Assembly: GCA_051294905.1 (NCBI GenBank)
Contig: CM119381.1
Span: 21,514,001 to 21,578,000 of the forward strand
Reading direction: 5' to 3'
Source of the DNA: Botryllus schlosseri
Taxonomy: Eukaryota
DNA: 64,000 nt
Positions within the stretch are counted from its first letter, which is position 1. Every line of letters begins with the position of its first letter. Of this stretch, positions 1,777 to 63,986 are shown one piece after another. The notes below the pieces were generated by a model that did no database searches, was not told the origin of the DNA, and saw only the letters and a program-made list of their open reading frames with translations. The position numbers and the translations under genes are program-made.

Positions 1777-2358
1777 CGCTAAAAGGTAATTGTATTTGGT
1801 CGATATATAAACATTTATCGGTATAGTCTTCATTAGTTTACATGTGTGTGACATGCGTTAGAACTTGAAAGACATATTCATGCTCAGAAGTAACTCAACG
1901 ACGGATATATAACGATTTCACGAAGTCAATTACGAATATCGGTGGATTTGTGATTTCCAGTCACAATTCACGCATCTACCGTTGATTCATCGCATATGTG
2001 TCACTTGTGCTTTCGCAGAATCGTAGTTCGAATTACTAATCGCTAACAAGATTTATTGACACTGCACGCATCAGGCAGTAAGGCAAGTTATATATAGTGC
2101 GGGCTTAACGGTGATGACGAGACTACTAAAAGGAAGCATATGCAAAATGCATGTTGTAGTGGTTTGAGCATTATTTTGGCCAGACCAAGTTAAATTCAAA
2201 CGGCAACCAATTTCCCGGGCAGTACAACATTGAAAGGTGCTAGTTCCTTGCCGACCGCACAAATTTCATCTGTGGACCGCAGGCTGCGTAGTGAAATTAG
2301 TAGGGTTGCAATAATTTCAGATCCGAAAAAAATACACTTTTTTAAGTTTCAATAAAAG

Positions 2359-2793
2359 ATGCCCAGATATCTGACGGTAATATTCATGGCCAGGTCGCCT
2401 TCCCTGATAACTTGTGTGCAGAGAAGTGGGTCCAATGGTTCAATATCCCTTGAATATCAACGCATTCCAGCGACAGCGGTTTTTTTCTTACCCTCCTTGT
2501 AACCAAGGTCGATAACGCAAAGCAACGCCGATTCTTTCCCACATCTCGTCACTATCATCATCACGATGCAGCGGAGGCATAGTCACCACAGACTCAATAG
2601 GCTTTGTGTCGTATTTGACGGATGGTCTGAGATTCCAAACTGAATACACTTGTGACGCAGGGGGCTAGCGACGTCTAAAAAAACGGACTTTCTCCCCCCG
2701 GCCTATCTCGCGACTAACGAAATTCGGCATGCAGCAGCGTCTATCCACCGCTCGTTGCAAAGCCTCGACCAAAAACCTGCTAAAACTCGCCAT
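2359..2793 (-). pseudogene. Pseudogene copy of the stand-alone CaMKII hub-domain gene
   Basis: Translates MASFSRFLVEALQRAVDRRC... matching ORF 60672..61319. Lesions: CAG>TAG stop at 2665-2667, a 5-nt deletion frameshift after DEMW, two further ~24-27 nt deletions, and truncation after MNITVRY (the last ~55 codons are lost). Confidence 0.9.
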
Positions 2794-3136
2794 TACCTCA
2801 TGAAGGGCATTCCGTCACACCGAAAAATCACAGTATACTCTCGCCATACTACCCCGAGTAAGGCGGCAAGTTGCACCTGAGCTAAAGACTAGGCGAACTT
2901 CATAAGATTGCTTCTATACAAAATCCCATCTTTGAATATGTATTGCGCAGCGTAGTGCATTGCATACCTTCCAATTGGCAAGCTGATCAATCAGATTAGG
3001 TTCAATGAAATGGTATATCCAACGAGCGAACAAGCATTGGTTGTGATTTAGTAAGTTTAATTTTGGCAGACTACTTACATAGGTATGTGAGGCATATATA
3101 TCAATTTTAAATAAAATTAGTAAGCAGAATGCTTAC

Positions 3137-3219
3137 CGGATTAGCATGCGCAGTATCTAAACTTTCACATTAGTTTAGCCTTATATATGGTTCAGGATTT
3201 TCCGCTTGATTTAGATCAC
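3137..3219 (-). other. Putative 83-nt non-coding (5' UTR) exon upstream of the hub pseudogene
   Basis: On the - strand: tatttag|GTGATC...AATCCG|gtaagc. It has the same length and canonical splice signals as the paralogous block at 61688-61770. Confidence 0.35.
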
Positions 3220-3406
3220 CTAAATAAGGAATCGTTTGATTCTCTGAATGTAAAATAGGCTGTATATTCCACCCCAGCATTAGCGTTGTATGACTTGGTA
3301 TGCTTCTACACTTCGTGCGGAACATATTTGGTGGTCGGTATAGCTTGAAGCAAAATCTTGAGTATTGTCAAAATGCGCAGCAGCAAGAGTTCTCTTCTCT
3401 CTAAAA

Positions 3407-45000: not shown

Positions 45001-48000
45001 GTAGACAAGCGAGTCACTGCCTCACTTGTCACCCCTGACCTCACGTCACTGACGCATCACAAATGTGTACTTGCACTAATGTTTAGTGACCAAGTTTGGT
45101 TCCACATACGTATGCCATCATGGGTCCTCGCATTTAAGAATAGCATCAGGACGAACTTACGATCTCGTAAAACTGAAGAAAATCTCAAATTTTGTATGAA
45201 GCTTAACCTTAACAATTATCAACCATACTAAAAAGCCACCAGGAATACCATGCGACACCAAACGACGCATTAACTGTAAAACACGCGTTGAAAGTAGATC
45301 AATACTTTTATTGTTGTCTATGGTTCTGTTGTAAATCTAAATGTTATTCGTCTTAAGCTTCGGAAAATACCATATGCCTCACAGTGCAATAAAATTAAAA
45401 TATATTACTTGCAAAATAATTATGCAGCTCAAGTTTGGCATATTCATTATTCAAATGAGGCAACCAGCATCATTATTACGAGTTTTTACGGAGAAAATAC
45501 GGTGCAAACGACGAATCCCATGTAGTGATGTCGAATTTGCGCTACCATGACGTCACGATTTTTTAATTCTGGCGTAGTAGATGATTGACATGTATGGCTC
45601 TTTCGGAGGTAAAACGATAAATATACGGTCATTATGGCTCTTCGGACGGAAAAGGTTCCCAACCACTGTTATTCACCTAGTCTCTACACTACAAGCTATT
45701 GTCTGAGTAGTAGTGATTATTCTTACGCTTGGTGTCGTTCTAAATGCCACTCATGAGGATGTGAATGGAGCAGCTAATGTTCTATCATGATATTATTTCA
45801 ATTTATGTTGGTAAAGTTTTATCAGAATCAGAGGTTCGTATAAGATGCACTGCACAATTGCCACTAATTCGTGCCCAATACTGCTGCCCAGAGGATCTTC
45901 GGAACACAGGAAACAATTTGCACCACGTGGTCCAAATACAGTTTGAGTTTGCATCTCATATGGCTCATAGAACCTTTAAACGTTTTGCCAATGCGGGCCT
46001 CTGAATTATAACGTTACGAATACCGAACACAAAGGTGAACCGAGCGTCAGTCAGTCAGTCAGTCAGTATGCTTTTATTCATCTCACCAACAAACACATGT
46101 AAATTGGTATAGATTGGGAGACGACGGGGGACCGGTAGGTCTTAGAATCAGTCGCCACCCAGCGGAGTTATATATGAGTAAATATGGCAAGATCAATACT
46201 AACGAACTTATGACAGTTAACCAATGGACATAAAAATAAACAACAGATAAAAGTCATGGAAGCGTTATAGTCTATACTGCATGCAGTCGGTTCATATAAC
46301 CGTATCCACATCATATTGGTAGAGTGTTTATGGCGTCAAAATAACATGAACGCTGCGTGTCGAACAGCTACCACTCAACAGGCCATTCTCTCGGTAAATG
46401 GCGGATCGACCCTAAATATTATTTGGTTTACTTTTGACACCAAGATACAGCATACACGCTCACGTATGGTGCCAAATTTTCCACTCCCATTCCATGTATG
46501 TATAGTTTTATATTTTTATTGTTATATTTATGAAATGTTGCGTGCTCAGCATTGAGAGGCATAGATGCTGACCACATGTGTTAAAATAGTACGCGCAGCA
46601 GCAGTGTCTGAGCCTATGATATGCGCCTATATATTAATATAATATTCTGATTATTTATTATATCTACAGTGATCAATGACGTCCAAAGTGAGTATGCTGC
46701 GATATACCTCTCAGATCCTTTTTACAGTAACGCTGGTTCTCTTCTAATTGTCTTTATTTCATGAAATGAAGTATGTTCTGAGCTCGATATAATCGAAGAC
46801 ACAGAAGAAGGTGTGATTGTGCCGCCAATATTCGCTGGACGATATTTAGACTCGACTCAATGCAGTTGGCTCATACGCGGAAAACCGAACACAGTAAGTG
46901 TAGACCATATTAGGTGGTCAAAATTTTGTCGTGGTGCGGATGAACATCCATTACAAATAATTGTGCTGTAATCGAAAGAGAGTCCAATATCATTGAAATG
47001 CAATTAATTGCAACCATCCTAACCCATGAGTACACCCGTGGCCTTCGATAAGTTTCCGTAGGCCCCGTGCACCTTTGCGGCTGGGCAATCTGTAACTCAT
47101 TTTAAATCGCAGCAAACAATACATTCATATTGCCCAAATTTATTCCACTCGAAGCGTTTCGACTGACTCTGATCAGGGGCGAACGTCAGTAATCAGTATA
47201 CGGTTAATCAAATTCGAAATATAAAAAAGAATTTTGTTGTTGTGACGTAATAATGACAATTACACAGAGTCGCGACGACAAAATTATTTCTATATTTCGA
47301 ATTTGATTAACCGCATTTACACTACTGACGTTCGCCCCTGATGAGAGTAAGTTGGAAAACTTCGAGTGGAATAAATGTGGCAATATCAACGTATTGGTTG
47401 CTGCAATATTGAAGTTCTACTTCTCAAATCCTATTCATTTTATATCCCACACCGACTGCGTTTGCTGTGTAAGCGGTTATTGACAGCTGCGATATCGCAA
47501 TCGATTTTATTCAAGATCGTATGCAGTGGTATGTTGTAAAATTCTATCGCGGACTTACAGGTGATTGAAATACGATTCGAGTTCTTTGACTTGAAAGATT
47601 GTAATTACGATGTGGACGATTTTGTGAGCATTTACGATGGCAACTCGACATCAGCAAGACAGGTACAAATTATGATGTTCCAGTAGGCCTATATATAGAC
47701 CATAGTTCTGCATTCTCTGTGCACAGGCAGTGGGCCTACATGCTTGATAATTTGGCATCGAATATTTGCCTCAGCTATAAACAACTAGACTATGACCTGG
47801 GCCTAGGACGAAACTATTGGTTCCGCTTTGGTAATCCAAATTGTTGACTTTTGAATTTTCCTTTTATTTACGGGGTTTGCACCCCTGAATGGTTTTGGGT
47901 CGCGTGAACGCGAACTTTTTAAAAGGTTCTATGTGAATGCGGACGTAAACACGAACTTCTTGTGACGTCATATTGCTCATTTCAACACTACTTTTCCGTA

Positions 48001-58702: not shown

Positions 58703-58890
58703 CTGCGTATCAGTTATTACTCAGGTTTTTAACTTAACGGCGGAAACTAATGATCCCATCCTCGTAAGCAATCTGTACTTGATCACTCGTCCTCCAACAT
58801 TTAAGACGTGTTATCTCAGCTCTTGAAAACGCTAGCGTGTTTCCGCGCTCACGGCGTTCGCGCTTCGTGGACTCTATATCAACTCTCGAC

Positions 58891-59407
58891 TAGGGCTGGG
58901 CAAAATCGAGTACCTGAGTGATTCGATTCTGAATCACGTGAAATGCTTCGAGTCGAGTCGAGTAATCGAGTATCACCCATTATGATGTCACAACATAATG
59001 TAATATGTCAAATTTCAAATATATACCTTTTATGCGACCACAAAGACTATAATTCCTGTTATCCATCACATTAAAGATATTTTGGTATTTTTTCGACCAT
59101 GCCGATTTCATTGCACTTGGTGACAATGTTGTGGGATAATCATGACTTCGGAAATGTGTTATTTCTAGTAACGTTCGTAGCTTTATACTATATCTTTGGT
59201 GTGCTACGATACGGCCAATCAAGGCTCCAAGGCTTCAACAGTGAAAATTAGTATCGAAACTATAATTCTCGTTGATAAATTAGCTTTCAGTGGCGAGGAG
59301 AGTATAATTTCAGTACTCGAAAAAATCGTATTTTACTACTCGACTCGAATCATTAAAATTAATACTCGATTGAGATTCGAGTACTCGAATCATTGTGCCC
59401 AGCCCTA
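58891..59407. mobile_element. hAT MITE, TAGGGCTGGGCA-end family with TCGA arrays
   Basis: TIRs tagggctgggca / tgcccagcccta. Perfect TSD ctctcgac. Confidence 0.9.
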
Positions 59408-59980
59408 CTCTCGACCCGTACGGATGACGACACTAAGTCAGATTGTTTCATCTTTTATGCTAAACCCTCCAAAGCATTACTTACTATTTTCTATTGCTGA
59501 ATATTGAGCGCTTCATCGCTCGCCTGCCTGTATATAAATGCCGCGGATATGGATGAAACGGATAAAGGGGCACAGAGCGCACTTCAGTTAATGTTCACAA
59601 ACTGATGAAAACTGGAGTGTGTATTCCTGCAAAGTATAGTGCCGTGGTTTTCCTGGGCTGCTGCGCATATTCCAAAATTGATTTAATAATTTTTGATACG
59701 CTAAACCGCTGAAACGCTGAATGGTAATTGTATTTTGTCGATATACAGTTATCGGCAGCCCTTATCAGTTTATATTCGTCACAACTTGAGATATATAGTC
59801 ATGTTCAGCCACAAAACATTCGATGGCTGCTTTATCACGATTGCACGAGTTCAATTACGAATATCGGTGGATTTGAGATTTGTAGTCACAGTTCACACAT
59901 CGACCGTTGATTCATCGCATCATGTGCCGCTTGCTCTGCTTTGGCAGAATCGAAGTTCGGATTACTGATCGCTAGCGTGA

Positions 59981-59986
59981 TTTATT
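59981..59986 (-). terminator. Candidate polyadenylation signal (AATAAA) of the hub-domain gene
   Basis: About 690 nt downstream of the stop codon on the - strand. Also retained in the paralogous segment (2052-2057). Confidence 0.35.
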
Positions 59987-60671
59987 GACATTGTGCTCAG
60001 GCTATGCAAGTCAAGGAATAGTTTTACATAGTGCCCTATTGAAGATCTATTTTCTTCTGTCGAAAGTCACACTGCGGTGAATTATATGCGTACCAGGGCT
60101 AACAGTCATGACGAGACTATATATAACTCACAAAGACAGCATATACCCACGTTGTAGTGATATTAGCGTTATTTGTGGCATTCTCGTAGTCCAGTTGAGG
60201 TTATAGATCAAACATCACAGACCAAGCTAAATTAAGCAGAAACTGGTGTTCGCCGCACAAATTTCCACCGATGGGGTCGCATGTTGCTTGCAGAGAGATT
60301 AGCCACCGTTGAAGTAGTGTTTTCGGAACATGGCTAAGAACTGCAGTAGGGATAGTTTGACTCGCACTCCGAAGAATAACTAACTGAAACGAGCACAAGA
60401 CGACTGACCAGATATTTAATCGTTCATTACTGTACAATGTATATTTTCGTAACAGAATGCGTCAAGTCGATTAAAAACCGTAATAGCTACTGATGCGATC
60501 AAACATACCATAGATATTAAAGCGACGACTATAGTTCTATAAAATTCATCGAATTGAAATAAAATATTTCCTCAGAAATTGAAGGAAGCGAACTCACAAA
60601 CTCTCGATCAACGTCGACACAGGTCAGTTTGGCAGACGGGCAGCCCGAATGTCCGAATAAGTTTGATCAAA

Positions 60672-61319
60672 CTACCCATCTAAAACCTGACGCCGCTTTA
60701 AGAGCCACAAGTCGTTCTGCCGTTTCCAAATCAGTTCCTCCTCGCAGATATGGCGGACGACGTCTTCGTTTCTTTTCAAGATGCGAGTAACCCGGTCGAA
60801 ACGAATCGAAACTCTATCTTCGTCTAGGATACAAGTGCTCGGATATCTGACGGCAATATTCATGGCCAGGTCGCCTTCCCTTATTGTTTGCGTGTAGAAG
60901 TGGGTCCTGTGGTTTAAAATCCCTTGTACGACTCGCGTCGTTGCTGGAAACCCAACGTCAACGCATTCAGGCGACAGCAAGGTCTTATACGCCTCGTAAT
61001 CGCGGTCGATAATACTTTGCAGCAGACGCCGCGTGCTAAGCAACGCCGATTCTTTCAAACCCCACATCTCGTCACTGTCATCAACTTCACGATGCATCGG
61101 CGGCATAGTCACCACAGACTCAACAGGGCTTGTGTCGTACGCGACGGATTGGCTGCGATTCCAAACTGAATTTACTCGTAAAACGGGGCGCTGGCGACGT
61201 CTCAAGAGAGGAGCTTCTTCTTCCCGTCCGCTCTCGCGGCCGACGAAGTCTCGCACGAAGCAGCGAATGTCCACCGCTCGTTGCAAAGCCTCGGCCAAAA
61301 ACCTGCTAAAACTCGCCAT
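60672..61319 (-). CDS. Intronless 215-aa stand-alone CaMKII association (hub)-domain protein, no kinase domain
   Basis: The C-terminal ~130 aa align by eye to the CaMKII hub. [23 protein letters not shown] corresponds to [35 protein letters not shown] to LVEGMDFHRFYF, and RVTR..[14 protein letters not shown] to RLTQ..SEETRVWHRRDGKW. There is an in-frame TGA 11 codons upstream of the ATG. Confidence 0.85.
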   Translation of the reverse strand: [215 protein letters not shown]

Positions 61320-61687
61320 TACCTCACGAAGGACAGCCCACCAAAAAAATCAAACTATATTCTGGCCAATCCACTCTGCACAAAGCGCTTGGTTCTACCA
61401 TCGCTTGGGACTTGAGTAACTACATACGATTGATTCTATGCCAATCACTGCTTTAGATGTGAACACCTTCCAATCATTACGCTACTCAATCAGATGAGGC
61501 TCAATCAAGTGGTATATCCGTCCAACAGGTAAGCATTACCATGTCTTATCAGCTTTCGCCAAACCCAGCACACCGCTGATGAAAATGCTATTGTGCTTTG
61601 GTGACGTAGTTTTAGCAAACGAATCACATTGCTATATGGCAGACAGGTTTATCAACTTTTAATAAAACTAGTGAGCAGAATACTTAC

Positions 61688-61770
61688 CGGATTAGCATGA
61701 CTTGTATTTGAACTTTGACATTAGTTCGGCTTTAGACATGGTTCAGGATTTCCCGCTTCTTTTAGATCAA
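61688..61770 (-). other. Putative 83-nt non-coding 5' exon of the hub-domain gene
   Basis: atattcag|TTGATC...AATCCG|gtaagt. Stops occur in all three frames, and it contains a 15-codon uORF. Splice signals are conserved in the paralogue at 3137-3219. Confidence 0.4.
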
Positions 61771-61981
61771 CTGAATATGGAATCGTTTGATTCTCGGATT
61801 TAAAAAAAACATTCCGTTCCAGCGTTCACGTTACATGACTGGACAATCGGCATGCTACTACAATTCGTTTGAAACAGCAGCTGATCATGTGTAGCTGGAT
61901 ACAAAATCTAGGATTATTCAATGCGATCTCTCCATTTTGAATACTGTGCAGCAGCAAAACTTAATTCTCATCTCTCTACGA

Positions 61982-62100
61982 CAGGGGTGTCAAACTTAAT
62001 TCGGGTCCTGGACCGGACTATTCAAATCATGCTAAAATGTTACATTCAAATCCATGCCTTATACTTAATCGCTGGAATGCTTCATCATCAAGCCTGTATA
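61982..62100. mobile_element. Left end of a Buster-like MITE; a second left end (cagtggttcttaacc) starts at 62203
   Basis: caggggtgtcaaac follows the target-like ctctacga. The right end was not found, so the stated end coordinate is arbitrary. Confidence 0.5.
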
Positions 62101-63464
62101 CATTTTTGCAAAGGACGGGGACCTTTAGAGTCAGAATTTATACAGCCGCACTACCACAGATATTTGCATTATATCTTTGTTCAACTATTTTATTTTCTAT
62201 ATCAGTGGTTCTTAACCGGTGATACACGGAACACTAAGGTTTACTTGAGCCAGTCTCAGGGATTCCATGGAGGACAAGACACACACTCAACTTATACATA
62301 TGATTTATGATGATTAGGGCGAATTATTTTACCTAAAACGGGAAATTTTCACCTATAAAATGATAATTCTGACATTTTTTAACATACAAAAACTTAATTT
62401 TGAACAAATTTTGACCTCAGGTATGTAAATTAGGTGTTTTCGCACATAATGTTAGAATTGTACTACTTATCCTCATTTCTGGTTGGAACTGTGTGTCCTT
62501 ACGAAGTAGTCTGGCCTGAAAAACACTCTTTCGGTCCGAAAACTGCTGCGTGTCCTATATGGTAAAAATATTTTTTTTTAAATTTTAGAATAACGAAAGG
62601 TACGTTACTACATTCTCGGGTAGGAAGAGTCTGTCGTAATTAAGTAGCTTGCCAAGAATGGAGTAAGAACGTTTAACAGTAGCTGTAGTTGGCTGTCACG
62701 TATGGAGTTGTGCATACAGTGCTGGTGACATACCGTATTACTTCATTCTGACAATGATGTCAACATCACAATTTTTCATCATGCGCTTTTTGATGTAAGA
62801 ACCAATGCCCGCGCAGTCTTGCTTCGGTTAGAATATGGTGGTACGTTGAGCATAACACCATGACAACCTGTTTGTTTCATTTGACAATGAGTAGAGAATG
62901 GGTCGTCTACAACGGTAGGCATATAGAGTGGGGTACATAGGCTGTAAAATGTAAAATTATGTGTTCACCGACAGTGCAAACATCTACGATACAAACAAAT
63001 GCAGGTTGCAAAAAAAAAATTCACTTTGTTTTACTTTTTACTTCCTTTTTTTGACCTAACGCTACAATTTTGACAGAATTCTGACTTATTTTGACGTGTC
63101 GAAGAACTCGCCCTAATGTTGATATGTCTTGGCCATCATCTTACGTTTCGACCAAACAATACGATGACATCATATTCCAAGGTTTAGCCTCGCATTTCTG
63201 AACTAGTATCAGAAAGGGAACAGCACATGTCAGGCTGATTTTTCATAAAGATTTTCTATAGCCGATTTTTCATAGTTATATATATGTGCGCTGTGATAGA
63301 TTTTTGTATTTAAGACACAACGAAAATTTTGGGGTTCCGCGAAGGCTTGCAGATTAGCGTAATTGTTTCCTGCTGGTATAAATAACTTGCATATAACGGT
63401 TTCGCGTTGGCCCTTTCACCTGTCTGTATACATACCTTTTTGAATAGTATATTCATATTAAAAT

Positions 63465-63510
63465 GAACCCGAATATTTTCGGCTGACACTCGTCAGGGGT
63501 AATCGTCAGC
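63465..63510 (-). ncRNA. Intact minimal hammerhead ribozyme (left arm of palindrome)
   Basis: Exact reverse complement of 63597-63642. Confidence 0.8.
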
Positions 63511-63596
63511 AACTAGTAGAGAATTCGAAAGAACAGCGTATATCAACAATAGTACGATTGTTGATATACGCTGTTCTTTCGAATTCTCTACTAGTT

Positions 63597-63642
63597 GCTG
63601 ACGATTACCCCTGACGAGTGTCAGCCGAAAATATTCGGGTTC
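63597..63642 (+). ncRNA. Intact minimal type I hammerhead ribozyme (right arm of palindrome)
   Basis: ACCC(63607-10)/GGGU(63637-40) form helix I. CUGACGA 63611-17; G-C helix II closing the loop UGUCAGC; GAAA 63627-30; palindromic AUAU loop; UUC cleavage triplet 63634-36. Loop II is complementary to the upstream GCUGAC (63597-602). Confidence 0.82.
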
Positions 63643-63986
63643 ATTTTAATATGAATATACTATTCAATTGTATATTGAAGTTCTGTACCTCAAAGAAGCT
63701 GTTCACATACCTTTTTGTCCATTTTCCAGAAAACTCCGAACTGAGTGTTGACTTTTTGCCTTTTCGGCATTTGGTATCGATGTCACCTACTTATCACTAA
63801 CGATGACTAGAGTTAAAAGGCAATACGATCGCCGAATGGTCATAATGTGCGGCATCCAAGCATGTTGATGTATAAAATTTGCTGTCTTCTGGCTTTATAG
63901 TAAAAGTATTAGTATAGTAAAAGTATGCTTATCGTATAATATCAACATATTTAAAAGAAATGTTCTGGATAATAGCATATTACAAG

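What the first reader, a model, noticed from the sequence alone, without database searches (positions are those of the whole stretch)
60672..61319. Kinase-less CaMKII hub protein encoded by its own intronless gene
Seen: a 215-aa ORF with ~85 novel N-terminal residues (including a basic RRRQRP patch) plus a diverged hub domain. There is no kinase or regulatory segment, no coding introns, and an in-frame upstream stop. The terminal HFH strand motif is replaced by KRR. Known: the hub drives 12-14-mer assembly and subunit exchange. Hub-only products are known as the alpha-KAP isoform of mammalian CAMK2A and in some bacteria and algae. Inference: a retroposed or relocated hub co-opted as an independent animal gene. 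It could be a dominant-negative or targeting subunit that co-assembles with CaMKII, or a new oligomeric scaffold.
Basis: partly seen in the sequence, partly recalled or inferred. Interest (0 to 1): 0.8.

Follow-up and report, generated by a model that had tools for sequence, protein, structure and literature searches.

The report
Diverged kinase-less CaMKII hub gene
The 215-residue reading frame is real and does descend from the ring-forming "hub" of the memory kinase CaMKII. It is a fast-evolving, barely expressed copy that has lost the residues the hub uses to build rings, so it is unlikely to join CaMKII and may be drifting towards decay.

Summary
Window 60672-61319 (-) is an intact 215-aa ORF with an in-frame TGA 10 codons upstream. 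No kinase exon lies within 12.7 kb upstream. Its C-terminal ~130 residues match Pfam CaMKII_AD just above the cutoff (24.5 vs 22.1 bits) and are modelled as a CaMKII hub.

It is not a lone retrocopy. The 495-Mb genome holds one multi-exon CaMKII hub, and three single-exon kinase+hub loci, one split into two reading frames. There is another hub-only gene (C16), which has a 73%-identical relative in a public run. The window ORF itself has an intact 245-aa paralog on C14 (54% identity) and a dead copy at window 2352-3324.

The window/C14 pair sits on a very long branch. It has lost Phe397, two of the three cavity arginines and all conserved interface histidines.

Constraint is weak: dN/dS is 0.64-0.81, against about 0.27 for the kinase+hub paralogs. 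Yet both ORFs stay open, which happened in about 0.3% of neutral simulations.

RNA support is about 1 RPKM in 2 of 4 runs, with no splice joints.

My reading: a lineage-specific, kinase-less hub derivative with a remodelled interface. It is probably an autonomous NTF2-like module, possibly decaying. Co-assembly with CaMKII is not supported.

The parts
60672..61319 (-). Complete 215-aa ORF (ATG to TAG), single exon
61350..61352 (-). In-frame upstream TGA, 10 codons before the ATG
   Evidence: open frame 225 aa; sequence
61125..61319 (-). Residues 1-65: unrecognisable N-terminal extension. It has a low-confidence helix at 3-26 and is disordered at 10-64. The RRRQRP patch lies at 61185-61202 and is not conserved in the paralog (RHHQQP).
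61065..61124 (-). Residues 66-85: acidic pre-hub linker (ESVVT...DDSDE). ESVVT is identical in the window ORF, L011 and the pseudogene. Residues 69-71 are modelled as a short strand.
   Evidence: analogy to 5ig5
60675..61064 (-). Residues 86-215: diverged CaMKII hub (association) domain. The Pfam match covers residues 96-206, which is 60702-61034.
60687..60695 (-). R209-R210-Q211, the positions of the canonical H466-F467-H468 on the last strand. The RRQ triplet is identical in paralog L011.
60415..60420 (-). ATTAAA, a possible poly(A) signal about 250 nt after the stop codon
   Evidence: sequence; RNA reads reach the 60310-60460 bin
60310..61215 (.). The only stretch between 59555 and 62272 with RNA-seq reads. 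Depth is about 2 in runs X18 and X20. The strand is not resolved.
2352..3324 (-). Dead paralogous copy (coding remnant about 2367-2793). Its first 86 codons are 66% identical to the window ORF. It has a TAG in place of the Gln of RRRQRP, frame breaks and a missing C-terminal third. About 550 nt of upstream flank was co-duplicated.
59715..59993 (-). Downstream block duplicated together with the gene; it matches window 1777-2064 at 75% identity

Best explanation
The ORF is a kinase-less, strongly diverged member of a lineage-specific family of single-exon CaMKII-like genes. Its N-terminus is about 65 disordered residues of no recognisable origin. This is followed by the acidic pre-hub linker and an NTF2-like hub fold. 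The hub has lost the determinants of canonical assembly. Phe397 of the lateral interface is Thr. The conserved histidines of the vertical-dimer face are Cys, Lys, Arg and Gln. Cavity arginines 453 and 469 are Leu and Val. It therefore most likely does not enter CaMKII rings. If it is functional, it probably acts as an autonomous small hub-fold module, at most a dimer. Its remodelled cavity still holds H137 and R176 and, by inference, gains R210; that cavity would bind a ligand or peptide. Shown here: the ORF, the hub homology, the gene family, the lost residues, the weak constraint and the low expression. Inferred: the oligomeric state, the cavity function, and that the protein is made at all.
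For: Hub homology is supported by Pfam above its cutoff, by PDB sequence hits that are CaMKII hubs only, and by the AF2 model. In the model, residues 66-215 mostly have pLDDT 85-95, and the top 50 Foldseek hits are all CaMKII hubs. The family in this genome comprises a multi-exon hub at C16:6.908M, single-exon kinase+hub loci L004, L005 and L003 (L003 is split into two overlapping frames), hub-only L001, and the paralog L011. In the tree, the window ORF and L011 form a 100/99 clade on a stem of 1.46 changes per site. The hallmark replacements are tabulated. Their roles come from PMC4859805 (Phe397) and bioRxiv 10.1101/536094 (three cavity arginines, histidine-rich dimer interface). Some constraint is evident. 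Both ORFs are intact at dS of about 0.45-0.5, and all indels are in frame. Only 0.3% of substitution-only neutral simulations stay open. Hub dN/dS is 0.53-0.66, and the third copy has decayed. RNA reads are confined to 60310-61215 in 2 of 4 runs.
Against: dN/dS is 0.64-0.81 overall and about 0.8-1.07 in the N-terminus, against about 0.27 for the kinase+hub paralogs. There is no difference between secondary-structure elements and loops. Expression is only about 1 RPKM in two runs and zero in two others. The strand is unresolved, and 4 of the 5 variants seen in the reads are nonsynonymous. No ortholog turned up in 1.84 billion representatives or in the 5.8-billion-protein set. The dimer prediction gave no answer.
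Confidence: 0.55

Rival explanations
1. The ORF is a non-functional relic: a duplicated hub fragment that is no longer under selection, whose frame is still open by luck or recent release.
For: dN/dS is high, 0.64-0.81 overall and about 1 in the N-terminus by ML. RNA is marginal. A sister copy 58 kb away is already dead. All assembly hallmarks are lost. No homologs were found in public protein sets. Four of five read variants are nonsynonymous.
Against: Two independent copies keep full-length frames at about 28% nucleotide divergence, with in-frame indels only. The simulated neutral chance is 0.3% for the total divergence and about 1-4% for L011's share alone. Hub dN/dS is below 1 (Z about 2.5 on the Nei-Gojobori counts). 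ORF GC is 52% against about 40% around it. Reads are confined to the gene.
Confidence: 0.3
2. It is a CaMKII-ring partner: a dominant-negative or targeting subunit that co-assembles with CaMKII or with the kinase+hub paralogs, like alpha-KAP.
For: The fold is that of a hub. Kinase-bearing paralogs exist in the same genome.
Against: Identity to any kinase-linked hub in the genome is only about 18-22%. Phe397 is replaced, and PMC4859805 shows that mutating it to Ala releases dimers. The conserved interface histidines are also replaced. Expression is very low. The N-terminus is charged and disordered, not a hydrophobic anchor.
Confidence: 0.07
3. The ORF is an exon of a larger gene, spliced to upstream exons. 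A consensus-like donor CCG|GTAAGT at about 61691 is conserved in the pseudogene copy, and an AG lies just before the ATG.
For: The conserved GTAAGT motif and a pyrimidine-rich stretch before GAG|GTAATG. Duplicated homology extends 550 nt upstream.
Against: There are no reads and no joints anywhere in 61216-62272 in four runs. No kinase-like coding lies within 12.7 kb. The in-frame stop sits 30 nt upstream, so an upstream exon would most likely be untranslated.
Confidence: 0.05
4. It is not hub-derived at all but belongs to another NTF2-like family (SnoaL or DUF4440).
For: The only Pfam hit of L011 is a sub-threshold DUF4440 match at 19.2 bits.
Against: CaMKII_AD is the only hit for the window protein at E<=10. 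All significant PDB hits are CaMKII hubs. It matches the genome's own hub genes, for example L001 at E 8e-10.
Confidence: 0.03

Closest known systems
CaMKII association (hub) domain, Pfam PF08332; solved examples are 5ig4 and 5ig5 (Nematostella), 2ux0 and 1hkx
   Same: It is homologous in sequence and in predicted fold: a long helix cradled by a curved sheet, with TM about 0.8 to the targets. It is preceded by an acidic linker, as in metazoan CaMKII.
   Different: There is no kinase or regulatory segment. Identity is about 20%. Phe397, Arg453, Arg469 and the conserved histidines are replaced. The protein ends right after the last strand.
alpha-KAP, the kinase-less product of mammalian CAMK2A
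   Same: A hub with a short non-kinase N-terminus.
   Different: alpha-KAP comes from an internal promoter of the CaMKII gene, keeps a canonical hub that co-assembles with CaMKII, and has a hydrophobic membrane anchor. Here there is a separate single-exon gene, a non-canonical hub and a charged, disordered N-terminus.
Stand-alone hubs of green algae and bacteria (bioRxiv 10.1101/536094; PDB 6of9)
   Same: A hub encoded without a kinase.
   Different: Those are about 50% identical to the human hub, keep the three cavity arginines and most interface histidines, and form 14-20-mers. This protein keeps none of those interface features, and its genome also has CaMKII kinases.
Hub-only paralog L001 in the same genome (C16:966554-967207) and its relative P0007
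   Same: Kinase-less, single exon, about 200 aa. In the tree it groups weakly (83/85) with the window clade.
   Different: L001 scores 72 bits on CaMKII_AD, keeps HxH on the last strand, and keeps a remnant of the regulatory segment (LQKLRWRRSV against L005 LKNLRWDISV). It is 73% conserved in another sample. It also appears in far more of the small public read sets.

Membership tests
CaMKII_AD (PF08332) hub domain | Profile score above Pfam's gathering cutoff | tested here: met
   24.5 bits against 22.1, residues 96-206. The margin is narrow, and paralog L011 does not reach the cutoff.
CaMKII_AD (PF08332) hub domain | Hub fold (N-terminal helix cradled by a curved antiparallel sheet) | tested here: met
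   The AF2 model has pLDDT mostly 85-95 over residues 71-215, and the top 50 Foldseek PDB hits are all CaMKII hubs. Caveat: the 10-row alignment used for the model contained canonical hubs.
CaMKII_AD (PF08332) hub domain | Deep cavity with three conserved arginines (human alpha R433, R453, R469; 10.1101/536094) | tested here: not met
   R176 is kept, R453 is L196 and R469 is V212.
CaMKII_AD (PF08332) hub domain | Histidine-rich equatorial (vertical-dimer) interface (10.1101/536094) | tested here: not met
   The histidines invariant in five canonical hubs map to C163, K199, R209 and Q211. Only the equivalent of H395 (H137) is kept. Which histidines lie at the interface is my inference from the paper's count.
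CaMKII_AD (PF08332) hub domain | Lateral-interface Phe397 (F397A releases dimers; PMC4859805) | tested here: not met
   It is Thr139 in the window protein and Thr in L011.
CaMKII_AD (PF08332) hub domain | Assembly into 12-14-subunit rings | not testable with these tools
   The dimer prediction returned 'no answer'. This needs native mass spectrometry or SEC-MALS.
CaMKII holoenzyme subunit | Kinase domain and calmodulin-binding segment on the same polypeptide | tested here: not met
   No kinase similarity in the ORF, in the window, or in 10 kb upstream. The N-terminus shows no profile similarity to the paralogs' regulatory and linker regions.
Processed retrogene | Intronless copy of a multi-exon parent | tested here: met
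   The ORF is a single exon. The only multi-exon hub lies at C16:6.908M.
Processed retrogene | Poly(A) remnant and target-site duplication at this copy | tested here: not met
   I saw no A-run after the 3' end in the sequence; target-site duplications were not searched for. The window copy and its pseudogene share non-coding flanks, which indicates DNA-level duplication.
alpha-KAP-like anchoring subunit | Hydrophobic N-terminal membrane anchor and a canonical hub | tested here: not met
   The N-terminus is charged and predicted disordered, and the hub is non-canonical.

The most novel reading that the evidence does not exclude
The protein may be a self-capped hub. The invariant ESVVT strand and acidic linker (residues 66-85) would fold back onto the open edge of the hub sheet, as the linker does in the ring-opened Nematostella CaMKII-B structure (5ig5; PMC4859805). 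The loss of Phe397 and of the histidines would add to this effect. Together they would turn a ring-former into a monomer or dimer that could cap or break the rings of the single-exon CaMKII-like kinases. That would be a genetically encoded regulator of subunit exchange.
Probability: 0.07. Interest if true: 0.7.

Novelty: new variant of a known kind. Interest (0 to 1): 0.4.

Why it matters
Stand-alone hubs are described from algae and bacteria, and alpha-KAP is known as an isoform of CAMK2A. Here an animal genome has spun off separate kinase-less hub genes from a private family of single-exon CaMKII-like genes. This copy shows what happens to a hub once it is freed from the kinase: its ring-forming residues are replaced while the fold is kept. 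That makes it a natural experiment on which residues the ring needs. The better-conserved sister gene L001 is probably the more rewarding target for function. The window ORF itself may have little or no function.

Tried and rejected
- **Protein searches.** Word-indexed searches with the ORF and with the ORF+L011 alignment found nothing. The exhaustive representative search gave only five weak canonical-hub hits and one biased 4583-aa hit.
- **Exact-sequence look-up.** No contig carries the protein.
- **N-terminus origin.** hhalign of the N-terminus against the regulatory and linker regions of the paralogs gave E 0.23 over 7 columns, which is nothing.
- **Constraint by structure.** Splitting hub codons into secondary-structure elements and loops showed no stronger constraint in the elements.
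- **Homodimer prediction.** Residues 66-215 gave 'no answer' with score 0.00. This is no evidence either way.
- **Promoter and terminator scan.** The tool is bacterial and irrelevant here.
- **Strand of the RNA.** It could not be settled because there are too few fragments.
- **Organism.** Names were coded. I only infer a cnidarian-like animal, because the multi-exon hub is closest to Nematostella 5ig4.

Full report
**Observation**

Window 60672-61319 on the minus strand is an ATG-initiated ORF of 215 codons. The frame is open for only 225 codons, so a TGA sits 10 codons upstream at 61350-61352. Pfam returns a single family at E<=10: CaMKII_AD, 24.5 bits against a gathering score of 22.1, residues 96-206. 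A sequence search of the PDB returns CaMKII hubs only. The best are the Nematostella hub 5ig4 (E 1.3e-7), the C. elegans hub 2f86 and the human gamma hub 2ux0.

**The gene family in this genome**

The ORF is not alone. A profile search of the whole 495-Mb assembly found nine places (window = C11:21514001-21578000). Follow-up searches used the window protein, L011, L001 and a canonical hub. Together they define a family:

- One multi-exon hub at C16:6.908M. Its first exon is closest to Nematostella CaMKII-A.
- Single-exon kinase+hub ORFs of 555 aa (L004, C6) and 512 aa (L005, C16).
- A third kinase+hub locus (L003, C6) split into two overlapping frames.
- A hub-only ORF next to L005 (L001, C16).
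- The window ORF, plus an intact 245-aa paralog on C14 (L011; 54% identity over the whole length, N-terminus included).
- A dead copy inside the window at 2352-3324.

The dead copy has a TAG where the window ORF has the Gln of RRRQRP. It also has frame breaks and lacks the last third of the hub. The window gene and the dead copy share about 550 nt of upstream flank and a downstream block. These copies therefore arose by DNA duplication, not by fresh retroposition.

**No kinase attached**

tblastn with the family's kinase domains finds nothing in the window or in the next 10 kb upstream. A profile comparison of the N-terminus with the regulatory and linker segments of the paralogs finds nothing either.

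L001 is different. It keeps a recognisable remnant of the regulatory segment and starts at the same ATG as a 199-aa protein from a public run (P0007), which is 73% identical.

**Fold**

An AlphaFold2 model built from a 10-row alignment gives pLDDT mostly 85-95 for residues 71-215, with the hub topology. Residues 10-64 are disordered and residues 3-26 form a low-confidence helix. The top 50 Foldseek PDB matches are all CaMKII hubs, with TM to the target of about 0.8. The caveat is that the alignment contained canonical hubs.

The best match is 5ig5, which aligns over about 148 columns rather than about 130. In that structure the acidic linker before the hub folds back as an extra strand, and this is incompatible with a closed ring (PMC4859805). 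The window protein has a comparable segment. ESVVT is invariant in all three copies and is followed by DDSDE. It is modelled as a strand at residues 69-71. So only about 65 residues are truly unrecognisable.

**Hallmark residues**

The literature names features that set CaMKII hubs apart from other NTF2-like proteins:

- Three cavity arginines (bioRxiv 10.1101/536094).
- A histidine-rich vertical-dimer interface (bioRxiv 10.1101/536094).
- Phe397 at the lateral interface, whose replacement by Ala releases dimers (PMC4859805).
- The vertical-dimer face is also the most conserved surface of the family (PMC9120016).

In the alignment with five canonical hubs and the genome's own genes (consistent), the window protein compares as follows:

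| Canonical residue (human alpha numbering) | Window protein |
|---|---|
| H395 | H137, kept |
| R433 | R176, kept |
| F397 | T139 |
| H420 | C163 |
| R453 | L196 |
| H456 | K199 |
| H466-F467-H468 | R209-R210-Q211 |
| R469 | V212 |

L011 shares nearly all of these replacements, including the RRQ triplet. The kinase-linked paralogs and L001 keep HxH. L011 no longer reaches the Pfam cutoff at all.

**Evolution**

In a maximum-likelihood tree of hub domains, the window ORF and L011 form a 100/99 clade on a stem of 1.46 changes per site. They group weakly with L001. The single-exon kinase+hub genes form their own clade, and the multi-exon gene sits with the canonical hubs of other animals.

Between the window ORF and L011, dS is about 0.41-0.49. 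The dN/dS values, by four methods, are:

| Comparison | dN/dS |
|---|---|
| Window ORF vs L011, whole ORF | 0.64-0.81 |
| Window ORF vs L011, hub | 0.53-0.66 |
| Window ORF vs L011, N-terminus | 0.67-1.07 |
| L004 vs L003 (kinase+hub paralogs) | 0.24-0.32 |

Secondary-structure elements are no more constrained than loops.

Against pure neutrality, both frames are intact and all indels are in frame. Only 0.3% of substitution-only simulations at the observed divergence stay free of stops. For L011's half of the divergence alone, which is free of the ascertainment bias, the figure is about 1-4%. The constraint is real but weak.

**Expression**

Four raw RNA-seq runs of the same species label were laid on 58800-63300. 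Reads fall on 60310-61215 only. This covers the ORF minus its first 100 nt, plus about 360 nt of 3' flank ending near an ATTAAA at 60415-60420. Depth is about 2 in X18 and X20, which I estimate at about 1 RPKM. There are no reads in X22 or X23.

The flanks 59555-60309 and 61216-62272 are empty in all four runs, which argues for a discrete transcript rather than background. No splice joint touches the gene, but coverage is too low to exclude one, and the strand is unresolved. The X20 reads carry five differences from the assembly, four of them nonsynonymous.

Small public read sets guessed to be RNA hold 5-12% of the sampled words of the window stretch, against 45-62% for L001.

**Interpretation**

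The most likely reading (0.55) is a lineage-specific, kinase-less, fast-evolving hub derivative that keeps the fold but not the ring-forming surfaces. It would act as an autonomous module if it acts at all.

The main rival (0.30) is a relic ORF on its way to decay. Co-assembly with CaMKII (0.07), a hidden upstream coding exon (0.05) and membership of another NTF2-like family (0.03) are poorly supported.

The most novel reading still open is a self-capped hub that limits or breaks the rings of the paralogous kinases. It rests on a model and an analogy only.

**Not resolved**

- Oligomeric state: the complex prediction gave no answer.
- Orthologs in other species: none were found in the protein sets, and eukaryotic genomes other than this one could not be searched.
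- The identity of the organism, which was coded.

Noticed in passing
L001 = G000:C16:965054-968434 (ORF 1498-2154, minus) and L005 = G000:C16:969815-973189: A second hub-only gene (199 aa from its first ATG) lies head-to-head with, and about 3 kb from, a single-exon kinase+hub gene. It keeps HxH and a remnant of the regulatory segment. A 199-aa relative with 73% identity exists in Logan run SRR25569784 (P0007).
   Followed up: partly
L003 = G000:C6:4154137-4157517: A kinase ORF (309 aa, 2180-3109) and a regulatory+hub ORF (294 aa, 1462-2346) overlap in different frames. This could be a frameshift, a short intron or an assembly error, in a close paralog of L004 (dN/dS about 0.27).
   Followed up: partly
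L002 and L007 = G000:C16:6906470-6910629: The only multi-exon CaMKII hub of the genome has Lys where canonical hubs have the two histidines of NPHVH (KPKVK), and Lys at R433. It keeps F397, R453 and HFH.
   Followed up: partly
window 58800-59420: This stretch is heavily covered in all four RNA runs, in both orientations, with many loose ends and variants. That is typical of a transcribed dispersed repeat. X23 shows one GT..AG joint from 58961 to 59284, with 7 extra letters.
   Followed up: no
window 62420-63030: There is low RNA coverage in all four runs, with 1-nt insertions at 62996-62997. It is probably another repeat, or a transcript unrelated to the ORF.
   Followed up: no
window 61685-61700 and 3125-3140 (minus strand): A GCTAATCCGGTAAG motif with a consensus-like splice donor is conserved between the gene's upstream flank and that of its dead copy. 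No RNA reads cover it.
   Followed up: partly
window 63430-63717 and 47109-47434: Other first-stage notes report hammerhead-ribozyme palindromes here. I did not examine them.
   Followed up: no
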